A program made the translations under genes and the position numbers. The notes beneath the pieces are model-generated. The model was not told the DNA's origin. It searched no databases and saw only the letters and a program-made list of their open reading frames with translations. From positions 124,001 through 188,000 of the IMG/VR virus record IMGVR_UViG_3300032516_000001: a stretch of DNA of 64,000 nt; one strand, given 5' to 3'. Each line of letters starts with the position of its first letter. Position 1 is the stretch's first letter. This document shows positions 7,125 through 38,055 of this stretch, piece by piece.

Positions 7125-8924
7125 TTATGGACGCCATACCCATCGTTTCTTACCAAGATCCCATATTTTACTGAAACCCTGTTGTGTCCGTAATTCTTCT
7201 TCCGTAGTTAATGATTTTTTCTCGTTTCCTTTTTTCCGAAGGCCCGATTTGTGGTATCTTTTGTTTGCCTTTACCCAATAATAATCTGGAAGTACTTCCC
7301 CATCCAACTTAAATCCAAGTTTATTATATATCCTACCACTAAACAAACGATTATCAGAAAATGACACAATTGACGTTGGGTCATTTTGTTGTATGAAAAG
7401 ACCGAATATTTTCGACCATACACCATGAATTTTATACTCCGAATTAGAAACCATTCTGAGCAATTCCCAGGGATGAATAGATTGACGAGTTGGATACCCA
7501 AAGGAGATTGCGGCTATTATTTTATTATCTAGGAATACTCCATAATGGAGTTTAGCATTACAACTCCCTATGTAATGAAATTCATCATATAATGGTTTAA
7601 CTTCAGAATGTAAAACAGTCCGTATTTTGCATTCTGAAGGGCGGATAGATTGTGCTCCGGAAAGTGATAATCGATTTTTCAATAATTGTTCAACTTTTGT
7701 TCGTTTAAACGTCCATTCATCTTCAAACAAGGAAATGAAATCAAAACCAGCATTAATGGCGTTATTATATTTTTGTAAATCCCGTCGTTTTGCCCCGAGT
7801 CCACTATGCCAACGGAGTCCGTTATACTCAAGTAGAAAATTTTTACTAGGAATATAAATATCATATTTATACTTATCGATAGGGTGTTCCATTATAACTT
7901 CTAAACCGAGGCTTTCAAACCATGATGCTAAGTCCTGCTGAGCCATACTGATATGATTAGAAGCGCACCCGCAGGTAAGCGACGAACCTTTGACTATGTT
8001 ACCCCATATTGGATCATATCTTTCACCACAAGCGCCACATAAAGCTGGGAATGGCTCACAATATTTTTTTACATCTTCGAGTGGCTGAATCCATCCAGAC
8101 GGAATATCATTAACTGAAATCGGGGTCTTAAGGCTTCTTAGTAATTGTTCATTTTCTTTATACCATTTAACAGCTCTTGACTGACATAAACCACATCTGG
8201 TTGTTTTACCAGCGGTAACATCACATATAATGGACTCTAAAATCCCGCCACATTTACACTTCCATTTAACTTTCTTATTTGACCCGGGTGAGATGCTTTG
8301 CGGGTCAGACATTCTAAGTTGGCCAAATTCAGTATTGGTCCAGTATTCTAGGGATTTAACATTACATAATCCACAAGAAGAAGTGTGTCCTGATGTTACT
8401 AGCCAAATCGGTCTAACCGTTGTCTGTCCGCAATCACATTTCCATAACACTTCCGTATGAGAAGATGGATGAGATTCACATGGGTTGGCCATTTTAAGTT
8501 TGCCATATTTAGTAACCCGAAAATGTTCGGCAGATAATATTGAGCACTTTCCGCATGTTTTAGTGTGGCCCGAAGTAACAGAAGTAACTTGGATATCGAC
8601 TTCACGTCCACAATCACAAATCCAAGTGTGTTTTTTCTTGGATTTAGGCAATAAATCTTGTGGAAATTTTAGTCTTAAACTTCCGTATTTAATATTTTCC
8701 CAATAATCAGCGGTTAAAAGTCCGCATTTGCCGCAAGAAACAGTGCCGCCAGATACAACATCACAAACGGAAGCTATAACACTTCTGCCACAATCACAGA
8801 TCCATTCGACTTTGCGATGTGAACCCCGTGATGAGTCCGATGGACTCATCATCCGAAGTTTACCATATTTTATATTCTGAAAGTGATTGGCAGATAAAAA
8901 TGTAGTTGCAATTGTGTCCATCAC
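7125..8924 (-). CDS. Homing-endonuclease-like protein: Zn-ribbon repeats, PD-(D/E)XK nuclease, Hef-like GNAT-type C-terminus
   Basis: Repeated W.C.CG...SCG.C units; YDIYIP..LLEYNGLRWH nuclease motif; WELLRM..SFSDNR..GRIY.KLGF..KIWDLG. Start is GTG 8924 or ATG 8921. Confidence 0.75.
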   Translation of the reverse strand: MMDTIATTFLSANHFQNIKYGKLRMMSPSDSSRGSHRKVEWICDCGRSVIASVCDVVSGGTVSCGKCGLLTADYWENIKYGSLRLKFPQDLLPKSKKKHTWICDCGREVDIQVTSVTSGHTKTCGKCSILSAEHFRVTKYGKLKMANPCESHPSSHTEVLWKCDCGQTTVRPIWLVTSGHTSSCGLCNVKSLEYWTNTEFGQLRMSDPQSISPGSNKKVKWKCKCGGILESIICDVTAGKTTRCGLCQSRAVKWYKENEQLLRSLKTPISVNDIPSGWIQPLEDVKKYCEPFPALCGACGERYDPIWGNIVKGSSLTCGCASNHISMAQQDLASWFESLGLEVIMEHPIDKYKYDIYIPSKNFLLEYNGLRWHSGLGAKRRDLQKYNNAINAGFDFISLFEDEWTFKRTKVEQLLKNRLSLSGAQSIRPSECKIRTVLHSEVKPLYDEFHYIGSCNAKLHYGVFLDNKIIAAISFGYPTRQSIHPWELLRMVSNSEYKIHGVWSKIFGLFIQQNDPTSIVSFSDNRLFSGRIYNKLGFKLDGEVLPDYYWVKANKRYHKSGLRKKGNEKKSLTTEEELRTQQGFSKIWDLGKKRWVWRP

Positions 8925-8957
8925 TACATAATATCACAACGTAGTGATGGACACAAT
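8911..8957 (-). promoter_or_regulatory. Perfect 17-bp inverted repeat with a TG-A-TATTAT (-10) box in its loop and the endonuclease start codon in its 3' arm
   Basis: 8911-8927 ATTGTGTCCATCACTAC is the exact reverse complement of 8941-8957 GTAGTGATGGACACAAT; 13-nt loop. Confidence 0.8.
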
Positions 8958-8964
8958 ATTAAAA

Positions 8965-11956: not shown

Positions 11957-12024
11957 ATTAAATACCTTTTTCCCCTGGCCACAGATGAAGTAGCCAGGGG
12001 AAATATTGATTCATCAGTATCTGT

Positions 12025-16434: not shown

Positions 16435-17163
16435 TTACGATACTTTCAGCTTCAATACTCCATCCACAACTGAGTGGCTATTGGCTCTTACCCAATCAAA
16501 AAATGCCCCTTCATTTATTTTGTTTTTATTCATGAACGGGCCTAATTTAACCCAAGCAGCATTTTCGACAGCTTTGCTTGCTGGTTCGAATATTTTTGTA
16601 ATAGGATCAAAATCTTTAACACCCATGCTAGAAGCTATTTCGTCCCATCTCTGATCATTGGCCAGACTTTCGAATTTATCGTTTTTATTCTTATTGGTCA
16701 ACACCAGGGTTTTGAACACTGCACCGTTCAAATTGGTGGTGACATCCATGTGTACTTCGGTCAATTCAGGATTAGAGAAATGCATCTCAATGCTAAGTGA
16801 TTCCTCTTGTTTTACATCATTATATTCATACTTGTCTATATTATATCTAATATTATCGACGGTTCCTGTATTAGGAACAAACTGTAATTTTCCACCCATT
16901 TTCTTCAATATTGCGAATTCATCTATGGCTTCATTTAGATCTTTATATTGAATACCATTCATCTTCGGTTTCATTGATGGATCAACATCAACATCGGTAA
17001 CTTCTAATTCATATCCCTTTTCTATTTCTCCTTTGTAATTATTGGTACCCGGAACTTGACGCATAAATGGTGGATATATTCCTTTATCGTTGAAAGCTTT
17101 GTCTATCATGAGCAACGTATCGCTGCGAACAGCTACCCGGGCAGCAATCTGTAGAAAATTCAT
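16435..17163 (-). CDS. Hypothetical protein starting with the IAARVA tag
   Basis: ATG at 17163 gives MNFLQIAARVA. Confidence 0.6.
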   Translation of the reverse strand: MNFLQIAARVAVRSDTLLMIDKAFNDKGIYPPFMRQVPGTNNYKGEIEKGYELEVTDVDVDPSMKPKMNGIQYKDLNEAIDEFAILKKMGGKLQFVPNTGTVDNIRYNIDKYEYNDVKQEESLSIEMHFSNPELTEVHMDVTTNLNGAVFKTLVLTNKNKNDKFESLANDQRWDEIASSMGVKDFDPITKIFEPASKAVENAAWVKLGPFMNKNKINEGAFFDWVRANSHSVVDGVLKLKVS

Positions 17164-17238: not shown

Positions 17239-17709
17239 ATGAACACCAAAAAATGTATCAAATGTGGAAAAACAAAAAGTATAGAAGAATTTGGTCATTT
17301 TAAAGTAAAAAAGAAATATGACTATGTAAGAAAGATATGTACACGGTGCATGTCAAATGCCAGAATTGTATATAATAAAAACCATCGATTTAAACAAACA
17401 TATCAAAATTGTGTTAAATTCAATAAGTTATTTGGAATAAAATGTGATTTCAGTCCGGAATTCGTAGAAAACATAATTAACCAGCCCTGTGCATATTGTG
17501 ATGATAATGAAGTGAAGATTGGACTGGATCGAATTGATAATGATAAACCATACTCAAAACATAACATTGTTCCATGCTGTATTAGATGTAATTATATAAA
17601 AAGGGATATGCCAACCCGAGCATGGAATATGTTGCATCCTGAAATCAAGAAAATAAGAGAACAAGGATTGTTCGGTAGTTGGTGTCCAAGAGGGTTGAAA
17701 TTAACATGA
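17239..17709 (+). CDS. HNH endonuclease-like protein
   Basis: CAYC..IGLDRIDN.K.Y...NIVPCCIRCN.IK; TGG-TAAAGT lies 5 nt before ATG. Confidence 0.75.
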   Translation: MNTKKCIKCGKTKSIEEFGHFKVKKKYDYVRKICTRCMSNARIVYNKNHRFKQTYQNCVKFNKLFGIKCDFSPEFVENIINQPCAYCDDNEVKIGLDRIDNDKPYSKHNIVPCCIRCNYIKRDMPTRAWNMLHPEIKKIREQGLFGSWCPRGLKLT

Positions 17710-18200
17710 GAATTTGTAGAATTTGTAAAGAAGAAAAATTATTAAATGAATTTTATTCACAAATTATGAAGTTGGCCAGTGGGCCGAAAAGAATGTATAG
17801 AACAGAATGCAAAAAATGCACTGATAAAACCTCAAGGAAATATCATCAAAATCATAGGGACAGAATGATATTGGATAATTCGAGAAGGGAAGACAAGAGG
17901 AATAATTTAAAAACAGAAATTACCAGAGAACAAATTTGTGAATTAATAAATAAACCATGTCATTACTGTGGAGAAACGTGCATTCCGATCGGAATCGATA
18001 GAGTCGACAATAATAAGGGCCACACCAATAATAATATTGTTTCATGTTGTATTAGATGCAATTCACTTAAAAGTGATATGCCAACACAAGCATGGATGAA
18101 GTTAGTACCCACTGTTCGAAGAATTCGAGAACTGGGATTCTTCGAACAGTGGGTTGGTCACAATCTGGGATCTAGAAAATTAGGTATCAGACATCGCTAA
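17706..18200 (+). CDS. HNH endonuclease-like protein, tandem paralog of 17239-17709
   Basis: CHYCG..IGIDRVDNNKGH..NIVSCCIRCN.LK; ATGA overlap with the preceding stop. Confidence 0.75.
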   Translation: MRICRICKEEKLLNEFYSQIMKLASGPKRMYRTECKKCTDKTSRKYHQNHRDRMILDNSRREDKRNNLKTEITREQICELINKPCHYCGETCIPIGIDRVDNNKGHTNNNIVSCCIRCNSLKSDMPTQAWMKLVPTVRRIRELGFFEQWVGHNLGSRKLGIRHR

Positions 18201-23064: not shown

Positions 23065-24396
23065 TTATTCTTGTGCGGCTTTATCTTTGATCCGCTTAAA
23101 AGTTGTAAGAGCTTTCTCTCTAATTTGCATAGTATTATTATCTGCTGGAACGGGTTTTCCCGTACTAGGATCTATTGACAATGCATGAGTTCCGGCCTGC
23201 CTGCGTATTTTAGCCCTTTCTACTCTATCCGCATCATATGCTTCCCATTTTCGATTGGCAGAACGACCAACAGCAATATCTAATGAAGGATTATCGTGTG
23301 AACCAGTACTCCTTCTAGGAATTGGACCAGATTCACCCATATTGTTAAATTTGAAATTTGTGGCAGAAGGTATCCTAGGTACCAACTTCCCACATTTTTT
23401 ACACGGATGTTTTTCGGAATATTGCTTTATATCATCTGATGAGAGCAACAACTCTTCAAACACTATACGACAGTCATTACATTGATATTCAATGATCGGC
23501 AAGGCCACTTCTCCTAATATACTATACTGATGATTTTTGAAGTTTTTTCTATGCCAATACTTCGACATATTCCGCGCATTCGTACAAATTTTGCACTCGA
23601 GAGAATCATTTCTACCTTTATGTTTATGGCGATAACAATCTGCAATGGGGATCAATCCGTGTTTTTTACATAATTTGTGTGTTTCAGTATAAGAAATAGA
23701 TTTGCTTCGGTAATTCGGATCCTGCCACAATATCTTTGCTGCAATAGAATTACTTATTCGTACTTTCTCACGATATTCCGGATTCTGCCACATCTTCAAA
23801 GTCGCATTGTGCATTTTCTCCTTGATTTCGGGTCGAGCAAAAGTTATCTTCTTGGTAGCTGTTGATTTAGCTATGGATTCCGGACTTGGGGGTTTTCCCA
23901 AACGTGCTTTAGCAATAACAACAGACATCTTTTCCCGGTATTCAGGATCTTGCCATAGTTTTTTCATTTCAGCAGATTTTTGTTCTGATGACATAAATAA
24001 ATAGTCTTTAAAATTGTCTAAGGATCGAGGCAGTGCCTTTTCACGATATTCCGGATTATTCCAGGGATTTTTATTTATATGTGGTTTGTGTTCACCACCC
24101 TTAGCCAAATTAAACCCGAACTGCGGATCTCTTGTATTGAAATGATTGATCCACTTCTCTTCAGCTAAATCGGCTGCTTCTAACGTATCGCAAATTTCTA
24201 GAATTCCATGAGTGAATGCGTCTTTCCCATATTTACGAATAGCATTCCAAAAATGGGCACAACCTCTGCCCCGCTTGTGTTTTGCATTCGCTATATGCTG
24301 ATTCCAACGCTTCATCATCGTTAATTTGGTTAACCCGATGTAACGACGTTGTGAATCAATATGTGTATGCGAATAAATCGTCCAGTGAAGTCCCAT
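23065..24396 (-). CDS. GIY-YIG homing endonuclease fused in frame to an FmdB-like Zn-ribbon protein
   Basis: WTIYSH..RRYIGLT..RWNQH..E GIY-YIG pattern; NUMOD-like repeats (KLWQDPEYREK); C-terminal (M)PIIEYQCNDC..FEEL..CKKCG. Confidence 0.75.
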   Translation of the reverse strand: MGLHWTIYSHTHIDSQRRYIGLTKLTMMKRWNQHIANAKHKRGRGCAHFWNAIRKYGKDAFTHGILEICDTLEAADLAEEKWINHFNTRDPQFGFNLAKGGEHKPHINKNPWNNPEYREKALPRSLDNFKDYLFMSSEQKSAEMKKLWQDPEYREKMSVVIAKARLGKPPSPESIAKSTATKKITFARPEIKEKMHNATLKMWQNPEYREKVRISNSIAAKILWQDPNYRSKSISYTETHKLCKKHGLIPIADCYRHKHKGRNDSLECKICTNARNMSKYWHRKNFKNHQYSILGEVALPIIEYQCNDCRIVFEELLLSSDDIKQYSEKHPCKKCGKLVPRIPSATNFKFNNMGESGPIPRRSTGSHDNPSLDIAVGRSANRKWEAYDADRVERAKIRRQAGTHALSIDPSTGKPVPADNNTMQIREKALTTFKRIKDKAAQE

Positions 24397-24416
24397 AAGG
24401 AACTTTACCAGACGAT
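24377..24416 (-). promoter_or_regulatory. 18-bp hairpin containing the -10 box (TAAAGT) and the ATG of the GIY-YIG gene
   Basis: mRNA strand AUCGUCUGGUAAAGUUCC-UUAU-GGGACUUCACUGGACGAU pairs 17 of 18 positions (3 G-U). Confidence 0.75.
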
Positions 24417-24441
24417 CTATTCAACCGATATTCGTAAGCCG

Positions 24442-25653
24442 CTAAATCACTCTCTCGTAGCCAATGTCCTTTCCAATCACAATTGCCATTCCTGCAATTT
24501 GGGATGGGTCACTCATAACTTGTAATTGATCCCAAGTATATGAACCATCAAGGAACCCCTTTTGCTGTTCCTCAGTCTTAGATATAGGATCGACTTGTGT
24601 CGAAGTAATGGGTAATGGAATATAAATTTCCCAGTCCACTCTCATTGAAAGCGATATTGCTCCATCATAATAATATGCATCCAATGTTTCATTATATATT
24701 TCTTCGCTTTCTCCACCAGGCGCGACATCAATCAACTCGAGCCCTTCGAATCCCCAATAATTCTGTCGTTCCAATATTTTATTTACTACATAATCACTGA
24801 GTTTTTCACGATCTTCAGCATCTCTAGAAAATACTATCAAATCAAAGTGGACTTCGAATTTTCCACCATAAATATCCGCAACTTCGGTCCTGCTTTCGGT
24901 TACTACTATTTCGATTTCATCGCATTCCTGGATTCTATCCCCGAATGCGAGAACAGCGCCAGGAATTGCAGTTAGGTTAGTAGTTTCAGCTTTAAACTGA
25001 AATGGACCCTGATCTTCGATCTTATATCTGTAATCAGCATATATAACGGAATCAATTGGTGTAGGCTTTAGGAAGGTTATTCCTCCTGTACCATAATCAG
25101 CAGTATAATCAACACCATTCGATAGCGGATGCTTTCCATCTATCCACAATCTAATTGAACCCGGATAGATATTCTCTCTAGACAACTGCCCGGTTGGATC
25201 AGATGATGTAACGAATTGGATTACTGGTTCGTCTGTAACTGTTAGATTTGGCTCGAGTATGAATGTTCCAGGGATATTGTGTGGTTCATCAGGAAGAGAT
25301 GTGACTTTGAGTAAATAAACGCCGGGTGGACTAGGAAATATATTTCGAGTCGAAGATACCTTCTCTAGATATAACTGGTTCTCCTTAATCCATTCTAATG
25401 AAGTACCGAGATGATTTTTAGCTGGCAAGTGTACTACGAATGACTTTAATCTACCTATATAGTTATTTGCAGATAACCTAACTCTATCAGCTGAAGTTCC
25501 GTTTATGATAACCCCCCTTTGAGGTCTTTCCTCAAAAGAGAATTTATTCTTCACATTTTCAGAATCAGAACGATAGCGTGGATGCTCATAAAGTATTCTT
25601 TTGAGCTCCCATATTATTCTTTTCTTGGTAGCCGATGTAAGAGAATTTTTCAT
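24442..25653 (-). CDS. Probable tail-completion/neck structural protein
   Basis: 403 aa in the structural operon upstream of the sheath; contains an Ig-like beta insert (DYTADYGTGGITF..P..DSVIYADY). Confidence 0.5.
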   Translation of the reverse strand: MKNSLTSATKKRIIWELKRILYEHPRYRSDSENVKNKFSFEERPQRGVIINGTSADRVRLSANNYIGRLKSFVVHLPAKNHLGTSLEWIKENQLYLEKVSSTRNIFPSPPGVYLLKVTSLPDEPHNIPGTFILEPNLTVTDEPVIQFVTSSDPTGQLSRENIYPGSIRLWIDGKHPLSNGVDYTADYGTGGITFLKPTPIDSVIYADYRYKIEDQGPFQFKAETTNLTAIPGAVLAFGDRIQECDEIEIVVTESRTEVADIYGGKFEVHFDLIVFSRDAEDREKLSDYVVNKILERQNYWGFEGLELIDVAPGGESEEIYNETLDAYYYDGAISLSMRVDWEIYIPLPITSTQVDPISKTEEQQKGFLDGSYTWDQLQVMSDPSQIAGMAIVIGKDIGYERVI

Positions 25654-26012
25654 TTACCAGGGATAGCCCCAGCTTCTACTAAGCGTCTAGCTAGTTGAGC
25701 CTTGTTTCCAGTTACATCAAGCCCCGAATCCTGGGCTAATTTAATCAGCTCAGATTTCGTATATTGTTCAATAAATAAAGCGACAGCATCGGATTCAATC
25801 TCAGTTTCTCCATCTATAGATATAACCGGCACGTCAATCGCTGGCGGTGGAAACGGTGGAGGTGGCGGCATTACCGGCACTACCAAAGGAGGAGGCACTA
25901 CTGGAGGTTGTGGAGAAGGTAGTGTGGGAGACGCTGCTGGGATTTCAGCAAACTTCATTCCGTACGAATGCTCTAGCACATCGTTTTCGGTTAATAGAAC
26001 TTTCCGTTTCAT
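25650..26012 (-). CDS. Pro-rich protein with a C-terminal SAP-like DNA-binding motif
   Basis: Poly-Pro linker; YTKSELIKLAQDSGLDVTGNKAQLARRL fits the SAP pattern. Confidence 0.7.
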   Translation of the reverse strand: MKRKVLLTENDVLEHSYGMKFAEIPAASPTLPSPQPPVVPPPLVVPVMPPPPPFPPPAIDVPVISIDGETEIESDAVALFIEQYTKSELIKLAQDSGLDVTGNKAQLARRLVEAGAIPGK

Positions 26013-26038
26013 GTTTACACCATCCGATTAAAAGCTGG

Positions 26039-27049
26039 TTAGTCATTAGGCATTTGTGACAACAAAAGAAGGCCAGTGGCTACGGCTGTTATCGGATCTT
26101 TAGCAGGCCTAATATCCGATATTTGAATCGGGAATTTATCTTTATACACATTAAATCTAGATTCAAATTTATCTACGAAACCAGCGGCCAATGAAGTTCC
26201 GCCACTTATGATTATTGGTATGGATTGAGGAACATGGATGGTATCTTTAACTTTAGCAAAATGCTTGATTATATTTTCGATTGAATAATCAATCAGACCT
26301 TGAATAAAAACTGCCAATGCTTCGACTTCACGAGATTTAGGACTGTTTATATCGGCTCCACTTTCTTTGATAGCACACATTTTAGCGGCCGTGGTATTTA
26401 CAGCCTTGGCCGCATGAATATCTATCCAGTCCCCGCCTCTGGTCAAAGAGAATTCAAGCGCATTCATCGCATTATATGATAAACAAATGTTGGTCATACC
26501 GCTTCCGAATGATATCCCAATACCAGAAAAATCTGGTATGCATTCAGAGAATATGATAGCCTGTCCTTCATTGTGAGGAGACGCATCATATCCGTTCTCT
26601 GTAATAATTTTCTTTAAGATAGCAGTATGATATGCATTAGTGGAATCAGGAACATCAATAGCCGGGGCAGGAACAGAGAAACAGCATTTTTCATTCTCAA
26701 TCTGCGGCTTACCAAGAATTTGTTGTAATATTAGAGCTATTACTTGTTGAGCATCAATTTCCCCAGGAGATATCATGCCTTTAGACAAAGGACGACGAGC
26801 TTCTCTATTAAAAAGATTAGCCGTCTCCATCGCTTCATCACCAATAATCAGTAATCTGCCATCAAATTCTACATAACTCTTCTTAGACAGTCTTAAGAGT
26901 CGTTTGTTCTCGAGCGGAAGATCGATAAAAGCGTCCCTAATCCTAATAGTCTTTACATTACCCTTGCTAGTCTCACGGGCAGAAACTATGTTCATCGTGC
27001 CGAGATCCAGCCCAACACCAAAGGTGTCATTTTCCTCAATAGTCATCAT
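26039..27049 (-). CDS. Actin-like ATPase (MreB/ParM/FtsA superfamily)
   Basis: Phosphate-1 GLDLGTMNIV, phosphate-2 GISFGSGMTN, adenosine ISGGTSL, connect-2 PITAVATG; ATG at 27049 overlaps the HNH stop (ATGA). Confidence 0.85.
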   Translation of the reverse strand: MMTIEENDTFGVGLDLGTMNIVSARETSKGNVKTIRIRDAFIDLPLENKRLLRLSKKSYVEFDGRLLIIGDEAMETANLFNREARRPLSKGMISPGEIDAQQVIALILQQILGKPQIENEKCCFSVPAPAIDVPDSTNAYHTAILKKIITENGYDASPHNEGQAIIFSECIPDFSGIGISFGSGMTNICLSYNAMNALEFSLTRGGDWIDIHAAKAVNTTAAKMCAIKESGADINSPKSREVEALAVFIQGLIDYSIENIIKHFAKVKDTIHVPQSIPIIISGGTSLAAGFVDKFESRFNVYKDKFPIQISDIRPAKDPITAVATGLLLLSQMPND

Positions 27050-27942
27050 GCGGCCTTTCGACGTTCTACTGTGCGACTTACGTGACACCAACAGCATACG
27101 ACTTCGCATTTATTCAACTCCACCATAATTCTGGACAAACTAGCCTGACTACCAATTAGATTAGAAACATTATCAAGTTTTTCATCAATGTGATCCAGAT
27201 CCATTTGCCACGGATTGAACATGTTACCACAATCGATACATGGTTTACTTTTATACTGTCTTACTAAATCTAATCGTCTAGCTCGAAATCTAGCTAAACC
27301 AGCATAATGAATACATTTTTTACACCCCGGTTTATATACTGGTCTGTGCTCCTTACATGACGTTACATATTCAGATAGTCTATCATGTGATCTATTCCTA
27401 TGACATCCAACACAAACCAAATCACATTTTTCTAATTCATTTTTCAATTTTTCAAGACTAGCAGTTGGATGATTAACTAATCTATATATATCATATATCT
27501 TATCAGTACGATGATCAAATGTCATAGCTTCTTTCTGATATACATGACCACAATCAATACAAGGATTTGATTTTATTAAAGAAACATATGCACGTTTGGC
27601 TTCCCGACAAGAAGATCTTTTTATAGAAAGTTTTTCGGCATTGGTAGCTCTGTAATTAGAATTATATAAACTTCTACACCTCTTACACATTCCCTTATTG
27701 AATTCAGTAATGTGTTTTTCTTGATTACACAAACTACATTTCTTATGATTGATATCACACCCATGCTTTAATTCATGGATTTCTATTCGTTTTTGTTCCC
27801 TTAACCCTAAGATATCACGTGATTTCCAACTATTGCAATTACATCTATGACGTTTTAAAGTCGATAGTGAACTCGCAACATAACCGCATATACACATTAA
27901 ACCAATCATATTATTTATCCTTAATTTCTTATCTTGTATCAA
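27046..27942 (-). CDS. Double-HNH homing-endonuclease-like protein
   Basis: CIDCG..MTFDH..KCDLVCVGCHR and CIDCG..MDLDH..KCEVVCCWCH. Confidence 0.78.
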   Translation of the reverse strand: MIQDKKLRINNMIGLMCICGYVASSLSTLKRHRCNCNSWKSRDILGLREQKRIEIHELKHGCDINHKKCSLCNQEKHITEFNKGMCKRCRSLYNSNYRATNAEKLSIKRSSCREAKRAYVSLIKSNPCIDCGHVYQKEAMTFDHRTDKIYDIYRLVNHPTASLEKLKNELEKCDLVCVGCHRNRSHDRLSEYVTSCKEHRPVYKPGCKKCIHYAGLARFRARRLDLVRQYKSKPCIDCGNMFNPWQMDLDHIDEKLDNVSNLIGSQASLSRIMVELNKCEVVCCWCHVSRTVERRKAA

Positions 27943-27943
27943 A

Positions 27944-28459
27944 TTACTTTACTGTTGATCTCAATTTCTTCAAAGCCTCTACTCCCTTACTTAAATCATT
28001 CTTGAATATTTTACCCTCACGCAACTTGATATCAGTTTCAGCTTTGTCGGGGGTTATCTTGGATGGAATAAACATCGGTTCCGGCGTCTCATCCGAATGG
28101 TTTGAACGCTCTTGAATTATTATGTGCTTCTCAGTAATTGATTCAGACTTCGGCTTAGATTCAATTTTAAGTAGAATATTTGCCAGCAGTGATTTAATTT
28201 CGTCCATATCTTTATGAACATCATTCGGAATTTGTGAATTATGTGGTTCCGATTTAGGTTTGACAAATGGCCATATTGGCATGACGTTCATTTCTCGAAT
28301 TTTATCTATTCGAATTAAATCACAGTTAGCAATAAGATCCTTAGACCTATCAGCAGTATTGGCATCTACGATAGCACTGCTACCTTTTCCAGCTAAGCGA
28401 ATACTCAAATCCTCTATTATTACATCAGCATTAACTATGTTTGTGATCCTATATTTCAT
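27944..28459 (-). CDS. Hypothetical protein
   Basis: 171-aa ORF coupled to its neighbours in the operon. Confidence 0.6.
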   Translation of the reverse strand: MKYRITNIVNADVIIEDLSIRLAGKGSSAIVDANTADRSKDLIANCDLIRIDKIREMNVMPIWPFVKPKSEPHNSQIPNDVHKDMDEIKSLLANILLKIESKPKSESITEKHIIIQERSNHSDETPEPMFIPSKITPDKAETDIKLREGKIFKNDLSKGVEALKKLRSTVK

Positions 28460-29121
28460 TCTCCGGCGTACTCTGCGATTATCTCGCCCAATTTTGGAAC
28501 AAAAGTATTCATTATAACTTTATCTAACTGATCCATGAATTTATCGATTATCCCTTGATTATCACCTTGTGGAAGTTGGATTCCGGTTTTTGTTTTTTGG
28601 ACCATTCGTCTTGTAGACACCGACAATTTACCTTCACTCGTTATTCTAGCAGAACGCGGCATAGTAAGAGCAACTTCGTGCTCTAAAGTCCGAATTTCTG
28701 CGGTCTTCTTATGACTTTGTAACTTCTTTCTGGCATCGATAGCGGGCTTTCTGGCGTCCTTTGCAGGCTTATTTTTGCTGACTAACCGCCTAGGTCCATG
28801 GCTACCCCATCCATATGTACGAGCCCTTTCTTCTAATTTCTGCTTGGCTTGCTTTTCAGCCAATTTTTCTTTAGCTATGTCCTGTTCAGTAACTTGATCA
28901 GCTGGGACCATAGCGCCTTCATCTAATATGATTTCAAATTCAACAGTATTACCATATGCATGAGCGAATATTTCATAATTTTTGAGAAATTCTGAATTTG
29001 GAAACCCAGCTGTATCAAGCGTCCTTTTTAATGCGATTAACCCCTCTTTTGCTATGACATCGATCGATTCATCGACGGCTCTGTGCATGGCCGCCCATAA
29101 AGTAGTAGCAATATCATCCAT
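28456..29121 (-). CDS. Hypothetical protein (possible neck/tail-completion)
   Basis: 221-aa ORF between the head-closure-like gene and the actin module. Confidence 0.5.
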   Translation of the reverse strand: MDDIATTLWAAMHRAVDESIDVIAKEGLIALKRTLDTAGFPNSEFLKNYEIFAHAYGNTVEFEIILDEGAMVPADQVTEQDIAKEKLAEKQAKQKLEERARTYGWGSHGPRRLVSKNKPAKDARKPAIDARKKLQSHKKTAEIRTLEHEVALTMPRSARITSEGKLSVSTRRMVQKTKTGIQLPQGDNQGIIDKFMDQLDKVIMNTFVPKLGEIIAEYAGE

Positions 29122-29129
29122 AACTGCCG

Positions 29130-30455
29130 TTAGTAGATTATATTTTCGCCAGTCACACTGCTGCTTCGTAATTCACGCTCATCGGGAATATTCTTTTTCT
29201 CAGTCATCATCGGAGTGGCATCGCCTTCCCCGGGCTTGATGTAGCGCGTACGTGGGAACTCCATAAAATATGGATCCAGAATTGGAACCGTGTATCTGAT
29301 GTCAGGTTCGTCTAAATGGGATATTGTAAAGAATTGTTGTAATTGCATACCACGATTAGTCGGCATGCGTACCGGACCTAATCCGTATCTATCACCATTG
29401 AGTTTGACTATAAAATCTCTCTGTGAAAGCAAGGGAGTCGGAATAGTCCAGGTATCATAAGAATGTGTTAAAGATCTGCCTCTATTACTTTGGGCTATGC
29501 TACGTTCGGCATCATCGGGCGCAATTATAATATCGTATCCTCCATCGTAACCACCTATGATTCCGGTATTGAAGCAAGTGCGGCAGTCACTCTTTGCTTG
29601 TCCATGAGATTCCACGTAGCATCCACATTTTGGTCCAGATGTCTTGCGAATAAATACTTTTACGCGCTCTCCACCCTGATACAGAATCCAATGATTTCTA
29701 CGGATGGCTTCAGCCCAAATATAATCAAGCTTTTCGACTTCTTGACTATTAGTTTTGGCTGCTCGTTCTAATGGCGTTTCAATTAATTGCCGGTTCACAT
29801 CATCATATGCTACAGTAGTTAGCCGATAAAATACCCGCTTAGCTAAATTCGTTCTAACTTCATTCGTTACATATTTATACGTTGCCAAAACCACATCATT
29901 TGATGACTGTGGTAATACTGGTCCAACTGCCTTCTGTGATGCAACATCATAATATGGATAATTTCGTATCTCCACAGCTCCATCGACAGACCAAATTCTT
30001 TCAACAGGCGAATGCACCCCATTTACCGTGACCTGCACATTCAAATCCGTACAATTTGCAGCTCCAATAGATGGGTGTAATATTATTGGCTTGAATTTAG
30101 TACTGAAAATATATTTACCCTCTGGATCAGTCTCCGGCCCCATTTTAGTAAATGAATTAGATACATTTTCTTGGAGAGATAAAACCACTTGAGTCTTGTC
30201 TCTCCAAAACGTGGATCCAACCGGAATATTATTAATCCTGAACCATGGACCGAATTCTGAATCGAAACTTCGATAAATATTTACTCCGAGAACGTTGAAT
30301 TTAGCATTAGCAGATATTTGCCCCGGACATGTCCAACGTATATCTACAGTGCTCTTTTCTGGAACATAAGAAGATATATTGATTGGGGGATGTGGCGAAC
30401 AGGGGTAATCCTGCTCGAGTATGTGCGGATACCGATCTCGTGGTGCGGGAGACAT
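29130..30455 (-). CDS. Probable head-closure/neck protein
   Basis: C.C..C..CF.TG..GGY motif followed by DFIV..NGDRY, as seen in head-tail joining proteins; N-terminal FN3-like strands. Confidence 0.55.
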   Translation of the reverse strand: MSPAPRDRYPHILEQDYPCSPHPPINISSYVPEKSTVDIRWTCPGQISANAKFNVLGVNIYRSFDSEFGPWFRINNIPVGSTFWRDKTQVVLSLQENVSNSFTKMGPETDPEGKYIFSTKFKPIILHPSIGAANCTDLNVQVTVNGVHSPVERIWSVDGAVEIRNYPYYDVASQKAVGPVLPQSSNDVVLATYKYVTNEVRTNLAKRVFYRLTTVAYDDVNRQLIETPLERAAKTNSQEVEKLDYIWAEAIRRNHWILYQGGERVKVFIRKTSGPKCGCYVESHGQAKSDCRTCFNTGIIGGYDGGYDIIIAPDDAERSIAQSNRGRSLTHSYDTWTIPTPLLSQRDFIVKLNGDRYGLGPVRMPTNRGMQLQQFFTISHLDEPDIRYTVPILDPYFMEFPRTRYIKPGEGDATPMMTEKKNIPDERELRSSSVTGENIIY

Positions 30456-30488
30456 ATCTCCCTATAATTCTCTAGTAAGAGGCGAAGA

Positions 30489-31204: not shown

Positions 31205-31495
31205 TTATTCATTCATAGTTATGTAGACTGTCCACAATGCCTTAAGTTCGTTTATAGCATTTCTAATCTCAGGGATATTTGGCATGTCTGGAGTTCCGAC
31301 CTCTATTATTTCTCCTAAGTGATCATCAAATATAAATTTGGATAACACTCTCCTACGATCATCCGCATGATATCTTATAAATAAATCGGCATGCTTATAT
31401 GTAGATTCAGGGTTCCCCTCCATAAGTTCAATAACATATAGACCGATAAATCTTCGCCAAACGTGCGGTTCGAATCTTTGGTGTCTAGTACACAT
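31205..31495 (-). CDS. Hypothetical protein
   Basis: 96-aa ORF overlapping the purB stop. Confidence 0.45.
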   Translation of the reverse strand: MCTRHQRFEPHVWRRFIGLYVIELMEGNPESTYKHADLFIRYHADDRRRVLSKFIFDDHLGEIIEVGTPDMPNIPEIRNAINELKALWTVYITMNE

Positions 31496-32801
31496 CTATA
31501 TCTTCGATGATTTTATCGACATGTCGTAGTGCATATTTGGTCGAACAACGAGATGCTAAATCATCTTTATTGAGTTTTCCGTCGGATATCAACTCACGTA
31601 CTTTAGAATGATTAAGTAATACCCCCAATAACTCTCCGATTTGGGTTTTCGATGCTTTTAATACCATCTCTTGAACTATGTCATGCGATTCTTTCCTCGT
31701 TAACCCAGTAGAAATTAGAGTTAACAATATGGTCTCACTACACCAGAAACGACTGTTCACTAGGTTATCTTCAATCTGCTTCTCATCTATCACAAGATTC
31801 TGAATTAGTTTAATAGTTCTATGCAGCATGAATCCAACAGTCGAAGTAATATCCGGAGCTATAAATCTTTCCACCGATGAATGGGATATGTCTCTTTCGT
31901 GCCAGAGTATGCAATTCTCCAAAGCCGGTGCAACTATGCCGCGCACATATCGAGAAAGCCCACAGAGATTTTCACTCAGGATAGGATTCTGTTTGTGGGG
32001 CATTGCACTCGAACCCTTTTGCCCCGACGCAAAACCTTCGTGAATTTCCGATACTTCACTGCGCTGTAGATGTCTAACATTAATGGCTAATCGTTCGATA
32101 GCAACCGCGATCAATGATAATGTCATGAAGAATGCAGCATATCTATCACGGGCGATGACTTGAGTAGATCCAATTGCTGGGTTGAGCCCTAACGTTTCTA
32201 GGGCTATACGTTCAATTTTAGGATCAAGATGGGCATAAGTACCAACAGCACCGGATAATTTACCGACCGCAAAATCTGTCTTAGTATTCTCCAATCTCAA
32301 TATATTGCGTTTGAATTCAGCCAAATGTCTAGCCAACATAAGCCCAAGAGTGATGGGTTCAGCATGCATTCCATGCGTTCTACCAATCATAGCAATATTG
32401 GATGTTTCTTTAATTTTGTATCTTAAAGCATCAACTATTCCATGGAGATAGTTATTGATTATCCGATACGAGTTCAATAATGCTATTGAGAATGATGTAT
32501 CGACTATATCACTGGACGTAAGACCGTAATGCAGCCATCTGGCATCAGGACCTACCTTTTCTTCTATATATTGAAGAAATGCAACAAGATCATGCTTAGT
32601 TGTTTCTTCTAATTGTTCAATTTTGGAAATATCTATGATTGATGGTAATTTTGATACAATTTTCTCGGAAGTTCCAACTGGCACAATTCCAGCTGCCTCC
32701 ATGGCTTCACAAGCCATTACCTCAACTGTTAACCAATTCTCATATTTAGTTTTTTGAGACCAAATTACATCAAATTCCGGTAGGGAATAGCGCGAAATCA
32801 T
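31485..32801 (-). CDS. purB: Adenylosuccinate lyase
   Basis: Fumarate-lyase signature GSSAMPHKQNP; TKHD, HYGLTSSD, GRTHGMHAEP, WHERDISHSSVER; 438 aa. Confidence 0.95.
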   Translation of the reverse strand: MISRYSLPEFDVIWSQKTKYENWLTVEVMACEAMEAAGIVPVGTSEKIVSKLPSIIDISKIEQLEETTKHDLVAFLQYIEEKVGPDARWLHYGLTSSDIVDTSFSIALLNSYRIINNYLHGIVDALRYKIKETSNIAMIGRTHGMHAEPITLGLMLARHLAEFKRNILRLENTKTDFAVGKLSGAVGTYAHLDPKIERIALETLGLNPAIGSTQVIARDRYAAFFMTLSLIAVAIERLAINVRHLQRSEVSEIHEGFASGQKGSSAMPHKQNPILSENLCGLSRYVRGIVAPALENCILWHERDISHSSVERFIAPDITSTVGFMLHRTIKLIQNLVIDEKQIEDNLVNSRFWCSETILLTLISTGLTRKESHDIVQEMVLKASKTQIGELLGVLLNHSKVRELISDGKLNKDDLASRCSTKYALRHVDKIIEDIDVY

Positions 32802-33240: not shown

Positions 33241-33548
33241 GGCGGTGGGATATTACAAACAGTTTCGATTTCTTCACACGTTGTAATTTGTGTCAAGCAA
33301 TCGGTATTCCAATATACACCGTTGTCATGCTGATAAATGCAAAATTCCTCACAGCTGATAGTCCCGCCATCAGCTGTGATCACAGGCTGAGATTCTTCAC
33401 ATGGTCCACCATCGGGGGCAATGATAGCCATGTGCGCGCAAGCTTCACCACATTTCTCAGCTCCGGGTACAGGGGTGACATGCGGCTCAGGTTCTCCGCT
33501 TCCACCACAACAACTGCAGATTATGACTAATGCCCATGCGTATTTCAT
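33237..33548 (-). CDS. Cys-rich lipoprotein
   Basis: MKYAWALVIICSCCGG signal and lipobox; regularly spaced Cys; ATGA overlap with the peptidase stop. Confidence 0.65.
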   Translation of the reverse strand: MKYAWALVIICSCCGGSGEPEPHVTPVPGAEKCGEACAHMAIIAPDGGPCEESQPVITADGGTISCEEFCIYQHDNGVYWNTDCLTQITTCEEIETVCNIPPP

Positions 33549-34408
33549 GCTAATGCTCCTTTGGTAAGTACCCAAAAAGATTTTGTTCCTGAATAGTTGA
33601 TAATATAATCGGTGTGCATCCAGACGTAACCTTGATCACCCCAATATTTACTCCAAGAATTTCGTACCTTGAACGCAGATTTAGCTTGGGACCAACCCAC
33701 GATGACCATCGCATGTCGACCAACAATAGGAGTACTGGGCTTATGGGCAATACCAGATTTATAAGCCATGAAGGCTTCATCTACATCGGTACCAAAGATG
33801 ACACTATGACGAGCCGCCAAAGCCTGAAGGATTAATTGTAGTCTGTCATTTCCTGTTTCTTTAATAGAATAAAATGCAGCGTATGTGTGCGCAAAAGCTT
33901 CTCTATAAGACATTAAGGAAGGCCTGTGAGCAGCATTATCAGCAATATATGGCCACCGAACTTCAGTACAAATACCATGACGCAGCATGCCATCAAGGAT
34001 AAGCCGGTTGTAGCAACCGGATGAAGCATTATAACCCTGAGGTGGATCTATCAATTGTCGCCCATTGAACCAAGCGAACATGCGAGAAAGATCTGGAGTA
34101 GTACTAACTGCCTGACTCAGAGTCATCCCATCATCTATTTTGCCTATGATAACTTGGGATTCCCCCGCGTCAACTGCTGCATTAGCAGTACACGACGGAA
34201 ATGATAACTGGTCCGAGATAGGGCGGTAAAACGAAGACACGTCCATTTCGTTCTGGACTGCGCCTCCTAAAACGAGTAATTTTGAATCTTTAGCTAATGA
34301 AAGATCTTTTTTTCCTATGTCCGGTAGATCATCTATCCAACCGAACCGCGGGATCAATCGAATCTGTGTTACATTTGTCAGTGTGATCATGGTGTTGCCT
34401 AATTTCAT
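33545..34408 (-). CDS. Papain-family (C1) cysteine peptidase
   Basis: DQ..FPSCTANA (catalytic Cys), GRHAMVIVGW (His), VRNSW...WGD.GY (Asn); the start may be TTG at 34357. Confidence 0.9.
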   Translation of the reverse strand: MKLGNTMITLTNVTQIRLIPRFGWIDDLPDIGKKDLSLAKDSKLLVLGGAVQNEMDVSSFYRPISDQLSFPSCTANAAVDAGESQVIIGKIDDGMTLSQAVSTTPDLSRMFAWFNGRQLIDPPQGYNASSGCYNRLILDGMLRHGICTEVRWPYIADNAAHRPSLMSYREAFAHTYAAFYSIKETGNDRLQLILQALAARHSVIFGTDVDEAFMAYKSGIAHKPSTPIVGRHAMVIVGWSQAKSAFKVRNSWSKYWGDQGYVWMHTDYIINYSGTKSFWVLTKGALA

Positions 34409-37199: not shown

Positions 37200-37667
37200 A
37201 TGCCGTTTCCGATATCCTCGACATCAGTATTTAGAATCGATCCTATATATGATGAACAAGAGCCATATATTGATAATGGACTGAATGATATACCGCATAA
37301 TATTCCAGGACTATTTATTGCTATACGTAATCCAATCATAAGACCAATCCCAATAACTTTTGATATCAAATTTCGAGGAACACGATACACGATTGTCCAT
37401 CCCAATATAGCCAAAATGATGATTAGGGCAGACAATTTCTGTAATGATTCATTCAATTTTGGTAGTATGGCCCCAATCACTACCTTTTCCCATGCATTTC
37501 CATTTGGACCAATCACAGATACCATTGACATTGACGAGAGAAAGAGAAATGAATTATTGCAAAAATTACGGAAAGACCTGAGCGATTGCTATAATGCAGG
37601 GATATCAGATAAAGAAATCCAACAGGTATGGGATTTCCAGTTAGTTGACAGTGTTCATCAGGAATAA
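37200..37667 (+). CDS. Hypothetical protein with an EVM-like C-terminus
   Basis: TG-TATACT lies 5 nt before ATG; ends QLVDSVHQE. Confidence 0.55.
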   Translation: MPFPISSTSVFRIDPIYDEQEPYIDNGLNDIPHNIPGLFIAIRNPIIRPIPITFDIKFRGTRYTIVHPNIAKMMIRADNFCNDSFNFGSMAPITTFSHAFPFGPITDTIDIDERKRNELLQKLRKDLSDCYNAGISDKEIQQVWDFQLVDSVHQE

Positions 37668-37679
37668 ATATCCAAATAC

Positions 37680-38055
37680 ACGAAAGCCACGGAATGAATT
37701 GCTCCACCCGTGGCCTCGCTGGTTCGCGGTTAAGCGAACCCGGTAGATGATGTAAACCCGAAAGCCTACTCCGCACTAGGTGCCCGCGCTACATCAACCG
37801 AAAGCGCGCTACCGTCTGAAGTGTTACCTTCACCCAAAACTAACTTGCGCCAACTTTGGGCCTTGCGGAACGGGAGCTCCAGGCAGCGTTTCCGCTGTCC
37901 TTTCCGGTTCATTGAGAACCCGAGGAAACCCCGGCCTCTCTCCACGGATGTTTACCTGGTGTTACCACCAGGAGGTTTCGGAGGGCTTGTCTCCGTACCG
38001 GTCGTTAATCCATTGCTGCATCAAACGACCGAAATTCCAGAGTCATTAAAGGCCC
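37680..38055 (-). ncRNA. Large structured non-coding RNA, class unassigned
   Basis: GC-rich island in AT-rich DNA with at least 10 stems. The minus strand shows GNRA tetraloops (GUAA, GAAA, several GCAA) and UUCG loops with G-U pairs. Overlapping ORFs have no recognisable content. Confidence 0.75.

What the first reader, a model, noticed from the sequence alone, without database searches (positions are those of the whole stretch)
24377..24416. Second, sequence-unrelated hairpin with the same architecture at the GIY-YIG gene
Seen: an 18-bp stem (one mismatch, three G-U pairs on the mRNA strand). Its 5' arm contains TGG-TAAAGT, and its loop and 3' arm contain ATG 24396 and the next codons. It has no sequence similarity to the 8911 hairpin and belongs to a different nuclease family, which suggests convergent evolution. 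Weaker stems occur at other co-oriented endonuclease genes (1164-1178 GATCCT/AGGATC; GUUGUAU/AUGCAAC around 40818; UUAUAC/GUAUGA around 42407). I saw no comparable stems at the two endonuclease genes transcribed opposite to the operon (9741, 17239), which would not receive read-through. Inference: a general rule for taming toxic nucleases inside late operons.
Basis: partly seen in the sequence, partly recalled or inferred. Interest (0 to 1): 0.68.

Follow-up and report, generated by a model that had tools for sequence, protein, structure and literature searches.

The report
Start-codon hairpin on a mobile nuclease gene
A very stable RNA hairpin buries the start codon of a mobile GIY-YIG nuclease gene in an uncultured 241-kb phage, and relatives of the gene keep the same fold with different sequences, so this is a well-supported new example of a control already known from phage T4.

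Summary
On the minus-strand RNA, 24377-24416 forms 17 pairs with one A·C mismatch and three G·U pairs (-22 kcal/mol, z -6.7). The stem extends to 25 pairs (24369-24425, -31.9). ATG 24396 lies in the loop and first 3' pair.

Of 69 gene starts in the window, only this one and the HNH gene start at 8921 are outliers (z about -7; all others above -1.6).

The hairpin belongs to a mobile cassette. It is kept in 61 distinct homologues from metagenomes. Their start regions fold far better than control starts. The non-coding 5' arm co-varies with the coding 3' arm. The mRNA strand folds better than the antisense strand.

The 5' arm carries TGGTAAAGT, an extended -10-like motif 5 nt before the ATG. A TAnnnT hexamer at that spacing precedes 20 of 69 starts.

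Best reading: the T4 I-TevI/segB/mobE type of control. Read-through transcripts are silent, and transcripts from the embedded promoter lack the 5' arm. These would be leaderless here, which is inferred.

"Late operon" is unproven, and the "general rule" holds for 2 of 5 co-oriented nuclease genes.

The parts
24369..24425 (-). Full hairpin on the mRNA strand: 25 pairs, two interior mismatches, loop UUAU
   Evidence: -31.9 kcal/mol, z -8.4; the antisense strand folds at only -22.4. Pair list.
24377..24416 (-).
24402..24410 (-). TGGTAAAGT, an extended -10-like motif (TGnTAnnnT) inside the 5' arm, 5 nt before the ATG
   Evidence: The sequence is. A TAnnnT hexamer with a 5-6 nt spacer precedes 20 of 69 starts against about 2.9 expected. 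TGnTAnnnT lies at -14 to -16 in 4 of 8 nuclease genes and 0 of 61 others. GGTAnnGT is invariant in 17 class-A homologues. Promoter activity is inferred, not shown.
24394..24396 (-). ATG start codon of the GIY-YIG gene, in the loop and first 3'-arm pair
   Evidence: It is the first start codon after the in-frame stop. All homologues start M-x-x-(x)-W-T-I/V-Y.
24424..24447 (-). Conserved 5' box of the cassette (ATTTAGCGGCTTACGAATATCGGT), which includes the TAG stop (24444-24442) of the upstream gene
   Evidence: Homology with the paralogue L005 begins exactly here, at -51. The box recurs in L006 and other class-A loci. Its function is unknown.
23527..24396 (-). GIY-YIG homing-endonuclease part of the 443-aa ORF (about residues 1-290)
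   Evidence: Pfam GIY-YIG at residues 5-88; PHROG homing endonuclease. Homologues are 258-285 aa long.
23065..23502 (-). Resident Zn-ribbon gene read in frame with the endonuclease ORF (possible own start TTG 23502 after AGGAG)
   Evidence: Residues 299-443 are 44% identical (E 3e-39) to the 150-aa gene that directly follows the 403-aa gene homologue in L126, an empty site.
24442..25653 (-). Co-oriented upstream gene (403 aa), the source of read-through transcripts
   Evidence: Full-length homologues at 61-64% identity. The gap to the ATG is 45 nt, with no terminator-like site in it.
8906..8960 (-). Second, unrelated hairpin (19 perfect pairs) at the HNH endonuclease gene. ATG 8921 is in the 3' arm, and TGATATTAT (extended -10-like) spans the loop and arm, 6 nt before the ATG
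   Evidence: Start 8921 is weakly supported by alignment to 201phi2-1 gp35 from residue 9 (E 6e-4).

Best explanation
The hairpin is a conserved RNA element at the 5' end of a mobile, free-standing GIY-YIG homing-endonuclease cassette. The cassette is inserted directly after a co-oriented phage gene.

On transcripts that read through from the upstream gene, the non-coding 5' arm pairs with the first eight or so codons. This buries the AUG, so ribosomes cannot start and the nuclease is not made from the host operon's mRNA.

The 5' arm also carries an extended -10-like promoter element (TGGTAAAGT) 5 nt before the ATG. Transcripts started there would begin at or next to the AUG. They would lack the 5' arm, could not form the hairpin, and would be translated as leaderless mRNA.

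This is the logic established for T4 I-TevI/II/III, segB and Aeh1 mobE. The difference is that no Shine-Dalgarno sequence is involved.

Shown: the hairpin exists, it is exceptional, it belongs to the cassette, it is conserved with co-variation on the sense strand, and the motif is present at an enriched position.

Inferred: translational repression, promoter activity, the leaderless start, and the timing of expression.
For: 1. Stability and rarity. The core folds at -22 and the full stem at -31.9 kcal/mol, with z -6.7 to -8.4. It ranks third among all 60-nt windows. Among 69 starts only 24396 and 8921 are outliers (z -6.7 and -7.0; all others above -1.6). The cost of opening -15 to +12 is 22.0 and 28.0 kcal/mol, against a median of 8.2 and a next-highest value of 13.3.

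2. Conservation in the family. There are 61 distinct homologue start regions. Their median z is -2.0 and 49% fall below -2. For 150 control ORF starts in the same loci the median is -0.19 and 5% fall below -2 (P 1.7e-13). Opening energy is 15.7 against 11.3 (P 2e-9).

3. Co-variation. Cognate 5'-UTR plus CDS combinations gain -10.1 kcal/mol, against -5.6 for swapped combinations. None of 10,000 permutations reached this (z -12.7). In the model-fitted alignment 74.8% of cells are paired, against 27-49% when the partners are slid. Ten of 16 pairs show changes on both sides. The unfitted MAFFT alignment gives 71% against 28-47%.

4. RNA on the sense strand. In the window the sense strand folds at -31.9 and the antisense at -22.4. 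Family means are -18.5 and -14.4 (P 6e-8).

5. Read-through context. 56 of 61 homologues have a co-oriented ORF ending within 51 nt upstream, median 24.5 nt. Here the gap is 45 nt and holds no terminator-like site.

6. Part of a mobile cassette. Homology with the paralogue starts at -51. L126 is an empty site.

7. Promoter-like motif and its consequence. The positional enrichment is given. Opening AUG to +15 costs 21.4 kcal/mol on the read-through RNA and 1.7 on the predicted leaderless RNA. For the 8921 gene the values are 19.1 and 1.0.

8. Precedent: PMC2988022.
Against: There are no transcript 5' ends and no expression data.

The motif could instead be conserved because it pairs with the 3' arm, or as a translation signal.

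With a 5-nt spacer the A of the ATG is the sixth base after the hexamer, one short of the usual seventh position (established knowledge of sigma-70 promoters).

No -35 element was found.

Class-B homologues (38 of 61) have hairpins but no TAnnnT at that spacing. The promoter-in-arm step therefore cannot be general for the family. Their hairpins are also weaker: 39% have z below -2.

Three other co-oriented nuclease genes manage without a hairpin.

Host, phage RNA polymerase and promoter classes are unknown, so 'early' and 'late' cannot be assigned.
Confidence: 0.55

Rival explanations
1. Translational coupling or throttling without an internal promoter. The nuclease is made only from the polycistronic mRNA. 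The hairpin keeps initiation very low, or allows it only when a ribosome finishing the upstream gene melts the 5' arm and re-initiates.
For: 56 of 61 family members lie within 51 nt downstream of a co-oriented ORF. Thirteen of them have a gap of exactly 23 nt, and the upstream stop codon sits inside a conserved box. Class-B members lack the -10-like motif at the leaderless spacing. According to PMC2988022, seven T4 free-standing endonuclease genes are promoter-less cassettes.
Against: In the window the stop codon (24444-24442) is 19 nt from the first strong pair (24422). This is beyond the reach of a terminating ribosome, which covers about 12-15 nt according to established footprint sizes. 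A 25-pair, -32 kcal/mol stem would not open spontaneously. The invariant GGTAnnGT at a fixed distance from the ATG is not explained by this model.
Confidence: 0.15
2. An RNA processing or insulating element. The long duplex is an RNase III-type cleavage site, an mRNA 3'-end stabiliser, or a U-tract-less terminator. It would separate the host gene's message from the cassette, and silencing of the nuclease would be a by-product of cleavage within the 3' arm.
For: The window copy and its paralogue have a 12-nt insertion that lengthens the stem to 25 pairs, about two helical turns, the size RNase III needs. The 8921 hairpin has 19 perfect pairs. Both hairpins start right after the upstream gene.
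Against: Most family hairpins have only 8-13 pairs, which is too short for RNase III. No T-run follows the stem, and the terminator scan does not pick it up. The feature that is conserved is that the arms bracket the ATG, not a position relative to the upstream stop.
Confidence: 0.12
3. A DNA-level palindrome. It would be an operator bound by the endonuclease (autorepression as in I-TevI) or by another dimeric protein, or a recombination or boundary signal of the cassette.
For: I-TevI represses its own promoter through an operator that overlaps it (PMC2988022). The 8921 repeat is a nearly perfect palindrome that folds equally well on both strands (-29.1 against -27.0).
Against: The GIY-YIG hairpin has G·U pairs that become A·C mismatches on the other strand, a difference of 9.5 kcal/mol. 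The same asymmetry is seen across the family (P 6e-8). The arms co-vary without sequence conservation, and the register shifts between homologues. This fits RNA pairing, not a protein-binding site.
Confidence: 0.06
4. No function: a chance or hitch-hiking inverted repeat.
For: None beyond the absence of experimental data.
Against: 0 of 200 shuffles fold as well. Only 2 of 69 starts are outliers. There is family-wide conservation with co-variation.
Confidence: 0.02

Closest known systems
Regulatory hairpins of T-even phage homing-endonuclease genes (I-TevI, I-TevII, I-TevIII, segB of T4; mobE of Aeh1), reviewed in Edgell, Gibb & Belfort 2010, PMC2988022
   Same: A very stable stem-loop covers the translation start of a GIY-YIG or HNH homing-endonuclease gene that sits inside a host transcription unit. 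A promoter element lies in or next to the 5' arm, so its transcripts cannot form the structure. The arrangement is found on unrelated nuclease families in one genome.
   Different: No Shine-Dalgarno sequence is present or sequestered. Instead the AUG and the first codons form the 3' arm. The putative promoter is an extended -10-type motif only 5-6 nt from the AUG, which predicts a leaderless mRNA rather than a T4 late (TATAAATA) transcript with a leader. The phage is an unrelated, uncultured 241-kb phage. Nothing has been tested experimentally.
RBS-sequestering hairpins of T4 late genes soc, e, 39, 25, 26 (cited in PMC2988022)
   Same: The logic is the same: genes on long polycistronic transcripts are silent until a proximal promoter yields a shorter RNA.
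   Different: Those are resident phage genes, not mobile nuclease cassettes. Here none of 61 non-nuclease starts in the window has such a hairpin.
Leaderless mRNAs with a TANNNT -10 element directly upstream of the start codon (Mycobacterium and other bacteria; lambda cI from PRM). This comparison rests on established knowledge; Cortes 2013 and Shell 2015 are cited in PMC11855218.
   Same: A TAnnnT hexamer lies a few bases before ATG or GTG with no Shine-Dalgarno sequence, at 20 of 69 starts in this window.
   Different: The usual spacing is 6 nt, whereas here 5 nt is the mode. No transcription start data exist for this phage. Combining this motif with an occluding hairpin on read-through RNA has not, to my knowledge, been described.

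Membership tests
T4-type regulatory hairpin of phage homing-endonuclease genes | A stable stem-loop that includes the translation initiation region of a homing-endonuclease gene | tested here: met
   ATG 24396 lies in the loop and 3' arm of a hairpin of -22 to -32 kcal/mol. The cost of opening -15 to +12 is 22 kcal/mol against a median of 8.2. GIY-YIG domain.
T4-type regulatory hairpin of phage homing-endonuclease genes | The gene lies downstream of co-oriented host gene(s), so longer transcripts contain both arms | tested here: met
   The co-oriented 403-aa gene ends 45 nt upstream, with no terminator-like site between. 56 of 61 homologues have the same layout. The transcripts themselves were not observed.
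T4-type regulatory hairpin of phage homing-endonuclease genes | A promoter placed so that its transcripts lack the inhibitory 5' arm | tested here: inconclusive
   TGGTAAAGT in the 5' arm fits TGnTAnnnT, and the position is strongly enriched in this phage. No transcription start data exist and no -35 element was found. The motif is absent from class-B homologues.
T4-type regulatory hairpin of phage homing-endonuclease genes | A Shine-Dalgarno sequence is the sequestered element | tested here: not met
   There is no GGAG, GAGG or AGGA in the 25 nt before the ATG. The start codon and the first codons are sequestered instead.
T4-type regulatory hairpin of phage homing-endonuclease genes | Translational repression relieved on the short transcript (experimental) | not testable with these tools
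   Only predicted: opening cost is 21.4 kcal/mol on the read-through RNA and 1.7 on the leaderless RNA.
Free-standing GIY-YIG homing endonuclease | N-terminal GIY-YIG catalytic domain | tested here: met
   Pfam PF01541 at residues 5-88, E 1.9e-11. PHROG 314, 7168 and 5123, all homing endonuclease. The WT[IV]Y...R.YIGLT motifs are invariant.
Free-standing GIY-YIG homing endonuclease | Presence/absence polymorphism at the insertion site, and multiple copies | tested here: met
   In L126 the 403-aa gene homologue is followed after 12 nt by the Zn-ribbon gene with no endonuclease gene between. At least 4 further copies lie on the same 241-kb contig. Paralogue homology begins at -51.
Free-standing GIY-YIG homing endonuclease | Site-specific cleavage and homing activity | not testable with these tools
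Intrinsic (Rho-independent) terminator | A G+C-rich stem followed directly by a U tract | tested here: not met
   The stem is followed by AUUUAUUCGCAU, and the terminator scan does not report it. The family 3' flanks encode I/V-Y-C/S-H, without U runs.
Rfam RNA families | Match at the gathering threshold | tested here: not met
   No match in the whole window. Only sub-threshold generic hairpin (miRNA precursor) matches lie at 24361-24429.

The most novel reading that the evidence does not exclude
The cassette carries a minimal, self-contained on/off module. One short sequence is at once an extended -10 promoter and the 5' arm of the silencing hairpin, and codons 2-8 of the nuclease are the 3' arm.

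RNA from the promoter is leaderless and translatable without any Shine-Dalgarno sequence. Any transcript entering from the host operon is self-silenced.

Such a module would need no -35 element and no ribosome-binding site. It would therefore work wherever the cassette lands, and it would put the N-terminal codons under RNA-level rather than protein-level selection.

It would be shared by a large family of GIY-YIG elements in uncultured large phages, and would have arisen independently on an HNH gene in the same genome.
Probability: 0.35. Interest if true: 0.6.

Novelty: new member of a known kind. Interest (0 to 1): 0.4.

Why it matters
It extends the control known from T4 and Aeh1 to an unrelated, uncultured large phage and to a family with more than 120 metagenomic hits, 61 of them with distinct start regions analysed here. 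It also gives comparative (co-variation) evidence that the hairpin is under selection. That suggests silencing of read-through translation is a common requirement for nuclease cassettes that lodge inside operons.

If the leaderless promoter-in-arm reading holds, it would show how a mobile gene can carry complete, host-independent expression signals in about 50 nt. It would also give a simple sequence signature for finding the 5' boundaries and true starts of such cassettes in metagenomes.

Tried and rejected
- Identifying the phage by DNA similarity: megablast of the locus against 50,697 phage records found nothing. tblastn gave only distant hits.
- tRNA and Rfam scans of the window: nothing. 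An E-value-mode Rfam scan of the hairpin gave only sub-threshold miRNA-precursor matches, meaning a generic hairpin.
- RNAalifold on the MAFFT alignment A2 predicted no consensus structure. The cause is one-base register shifts in the inner helix. It was replaced by a named-structure count, a covariance-model alignment and an alignment-free arm-swap test.
- Intrinsic terminator reading: rejected, because no T tail follows the stem.
- Full sigma-70 promoter (-35 plus -10) at the hairpin: none found.
- The exact word GGTAAAGT is not over-represented in the window: 3 against 1.4 expected, and 16 of 100 shuffles reach 3. Only the degenerate, position-specific motif is enriched.
- 'Weaker stems' at 1156, 40818 and 42407: rejected as background.
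- Relatives of the 8921 HNH gene that cover its N-terminus: too few to test conservation of that hairpin. The start at 8921 is supported only weakly.
- TAnnnT spacing in the flanks of homologous loci: only a weak enrichment, not used as evidence.
- The mobE hairpin paper (PMC2655525) is not held. It is cited only through the review.

Full report
**What is there**

Genes in the window run mostly on the minus strand. It has 17 pairs, one A·C mismatch (24406/24387), three G·U pairs and the loop UUAU. Energy is -22.0 kcal/mol, z -6.69, and 0 of 200 shuffles fold as well.

The helix continues outward to 25 pairs over 24369-24425, at -31.9 kcal/mol and z -8.4. TGGTAAAGT lies at 24410-24402 in the 5' arm. 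The A and U of ATG 24396 are in the loop, and the G makes the first pair of the 3' arm.

The ORF 23065-24396 has a GIY-YIG domain at residues 5-88 (Pfam E 1.9e-11). It also matches PHROG homing-endonuclease families.

**Is it more than chance, and is it specific?**

Among all 60-nt windows on both strands, this hairpin ranks third and the 8906-8965 hairpin ranks eighth.

I folded -40 to +30 around 69 curated gene starts against dinucleotide shuffles. Only 24396 (-32.2 kcal/mol, z -6.7) and 8921 (-29.1 kcal/mol, z -7.0) stand out. Every other start has z above -1.6.

The free energy needed to open -15 to +12 is 28.0 kcal/mol at 8921 and 22.0 at 24396. The next highest value is 13.3 and the median is 8.2.

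PHROG searches confirm eight nuclease-like genes (with for the GIY-YIG gene). Five are on the minus strand:
- 362-1156
- 7125-8921
- 23065-24396
- 39244-40818
- 41136-42407

Three are on the plus strand:
- 9741-11345
- 17239-17709
- 17706-18200

So 2 of 8 nuclease genes carry such a hairpin, against 0 of 61 other genes (hypergeometric P 0.012). The contrast between co-oriented genes (2 of 5) and divergent genes (0 of 3) has no statistical weight.

**Origin and mobility**

The window is part of a 241,648-bp contig, Ga0315273_10000003 / IMGVR_UViG_3300032516_000001. It has no close relative among sequenced phages.

The GIY-YIG protein belongs to a large family, with at least 127 metagenome hits. 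At least four further copies lie on the same contig.

A paralogue (L005, 54% protein identity) shares an 88.5%-identical DNA block. The block begins exactly 51 nt before the ATG, at ATTTAGCGG (24447), and runs to about +360. The hairpin region within it is 100% identical.

A related 427-kb phage contig (L126) shows an empty site. There, the homologue of the upstream 403-aa gene is followed after 12 nt by a 150-aa Zn-ribbon gene. That gene is 44% identical (E 3e-39) to residues 299-443 of the window's 443-aa ORF.

The window ORF is therefore an endonuclease of about 290 aa read in frame into the resident gene. The hairpin lies wholly within the inserted cassette.

**Conservation**

I extracted 61 distinct start regions of homologues. 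Nearly all fold so that the non-coding stretch just 5' of the ATG pairs with the first codons up to and including the conserved TGG-AC (Trp-Thr). The ATG sits in or next to the loop. Arm sequences and register differ between homologues.

| Measure | Homologue starts | Comparison | P |
|---|---|---|---|
| Median z, -35 to +30 | -2.0 (49% below -2) | -0.19 (5% below -2), 150 control ORF starts in the same loci | 1.7e-13 |
| Opening energy (kcal/mol) | 15.7 | 11.3, control starts | 2e-9 |
| Energy gained by joining 5'-UTR and CDS (kcal/mol) | -10.1 (cognate) | -5.6 (swapped between homologues) | 0 of 10,000 permutations, z -12.7 |
| Mean folding energy by strand (kcal/mol) | -18.5 (mRNA strand) | -14.4 (antisense strand) | 6e-8 |

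On an unfitted MAFFT alignment of 17 class-A sequences, 71% of cells pair in the window's register, against 28-47% when the partners are slid. On a covariance-model alignment of 35 distinct sequences, 74.8% of cells pair, and 0 of 500 shuffles reach this. Ten of 16 pairs have changes on both sides.

In the window the sense strand folds at -31.9 kcal/mol and the antisense at -22.4. This points to an RNA structure rather than a DNA palindrome or a protein-binding site.

**Context for read-through**

56 of 61 homologues have a co-oriented ORF ending within 51 nt upstream, with a median gap of 24.5 nt. Here the gap is 45 nt. The hairpin is not followed by a T run, and the terminator scan does not call it.

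**The promoter-like motif**

No Shine-Dalgarno sequence precedes the ATG. Across the window, a TAnnnT hexamer lies 5 nt (13 genes) or 6 nt (7 genes) before the start codon at 20 of 69 starts. About 1.4 per offset is expected. The consensus is tG-TA(t/a)(a)GT.

The full extended -10 pattern TGnTAnnnT occurs at -14 to -16 in four of the eight nuclease genes (8921, 24396, 42407, 17239). It occurs there in none of the other 61 genes.

In 17 class-A homologues from other contigs, G-T-A-n-n-G-T is invariant at 5-6 nt from the ATG, while its pairing partners vary. This suggests a sequence-specific role in addition to pairing.

A transcript beginning at the AUG would be open: opening the first 15 nt costs 1.7 kcal/mol. 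On the read-through RNA the cost is 21.4. For 8921 the values are 1.0 and 19.1.

These points make an embedded promoter giving a leaderless mRNA plausible, but there are no transcription start data. No -35 element was found. The 5-nt spacing is one base shorter than the usual optimum. Class-B homologues (38 of 61) lack the motif at this spacing and instead share a box, TAG-N3-5-CTTTTATGGA, of unknown role.

**Comparison with what is known**

The review of T4 mobile elements (PMC2988022) describes exactly this logic for I-TevI, I-TevII, I-TevIII, segB and Aeh1 mobE. [quoted passage not shown] A late promoter is placed so that its transcripts cannot form the hairpin.

The present case shares the architecture. 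It differs in three ways:
- It has no Shine-Dalgarno sequence; the AUG and the first codons are buried instead.
- The promoter type and spacing differ, and they predict a leaderless mRNA.
- The phage lineage is unrelated.

I found no paper that combines leaderless expression with such a hairpin for a homing endonuclease.

**Verdict**

The 'general rule' is overstated, because 2 of 5 co-oriented nuclease genes show it. 'Late operon' is unproven, since the neighbouring genes are mostly unannotated or non-structural.

Convergence between the two hairpins is plausible. They are unrelated in sequence, sit on different nuclease families, and both carry an extended -10-like motif next to the ATG. The 8921 hairpin could not be tested comparatively.

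Noticed in passing
window 37670-37960 (- strand): A GC-rich island of about 290 nt in a 40% GC genome. It folds at -128 kcal/mol (z -5.2), with many tetraloop-capped hairpins and a terminal hairpin followed by a U-rich tail. No tRNA and no Rfam match. The ORFs listed there (37513-37776 -, 37780-38049 +) are probably not genes. It is a candidate unknown structured RNA.
   Followed up: partly
window, 20 of 69 gene starts (e.g. 16405, 40818, 41112, 43360, 36843, 60436, 17239+, 9741+): A TAnnnT hexamer (consensus tG-TAtaGT) lies exactly 5-6 nt before the start codon, against about 2.9 expected. These genes have no Shine-Dalgarno sequence. This suggests widespread leaderless transcripts in this phage. 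The empty site in L126 shows the same pattern (TAGTATAGTttaattGTG).
   Followed up: partly
window 23065-24396 (-); junction near 23502-23527: The 443-aa 'GIY-YIG' ORF is a composite. An endonuclease of about 290 aa has no stop codon of its own and reads in frame into the resident 145-150-aa Zn-ribbon gene. That gene is the homologue of the one at the empty site in L126 (44% identity, E 3e-39). A possible independent start is TTG 23502, preceded by AGGAG.
   Followed up: partly
window 26039-27109 (-): A full-length match to Pfam Volactin (PF25216, E 1.5e-65), an actin-like protein family, encoded two genes upstream of the hairpin locus.
   Followed up: no
window 18107-18154: A 20-pair inverted repeat (-34.7 kcal/mol, the top-ranked 60-nt window). 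It lies inside the 3' end of the EndoVII/HNH-like ORF 17706-18200 (+), just before the end of the convergent 1567-aa gene at 18219. It may be a bidirectional terminator.
   Followed up: no
window 7125-8921 (-), 39244-40818 (-), 9741-11345 (+): Three HNH endonuclease-like genes each carry a C-terminal Mom-like (DNA modification, GNAT-related) domain.
   Followed up: no
window 8925-8930 (-): An AUG-UAG start-stop mini-ORF lies inside the 3' arm of the 8921 hairpin, immediately before GTG 8924 / ATG 8921.
   Followed up: no
window 24424-24447 (-); class-B loci such as L040, L018, L029: A conserved box lies at the 5' edge of the cassette and contains the upstream gene's stop codon. It reads ATTTAGCGGCTTACGAATATCGGT here. 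In the other 38 homologues it reads TAG-N3-5-CTTTTATGGA, with the stop often exactly 23 nt before the ATG. Its role is unknown.
   Followed up: partly
L001 and L002 (other assemblies of the same locus), position equivalent to window 24380: The only difference within the hairpin is C to T in the 3' arm. It turns a G-C pair into G·U, so the stem is kept, and it changes the Thr codon ACG to ATG.
   Followed up: no
window 11966-12000 (-): A 14-pair hairpin (cccctggc...gccagggg) followed by AAAAAGG lies directly upstream of ATG 11956. It does not cover the start codon.
   Followed up: no
L039 (same 241-kb contig, 25739-30467): Two GIY-YIG paralogues lie in tandem, with GTG starts at locus positions 1989 and 3777. 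In the second, the start region pairs with codons about 13-17 instead of codons 2-5.
   Followed up: no
window 31485-32801, 33545-34408, 16435-17163 (-): Adenylosuccinate lyase (Pfam Lyase_1, E 1e-49), a papain-family cysteine protease (E 5e-18) and a weak SinI-like restriction endonuclease match (E 5e-5).
   Followed up: no
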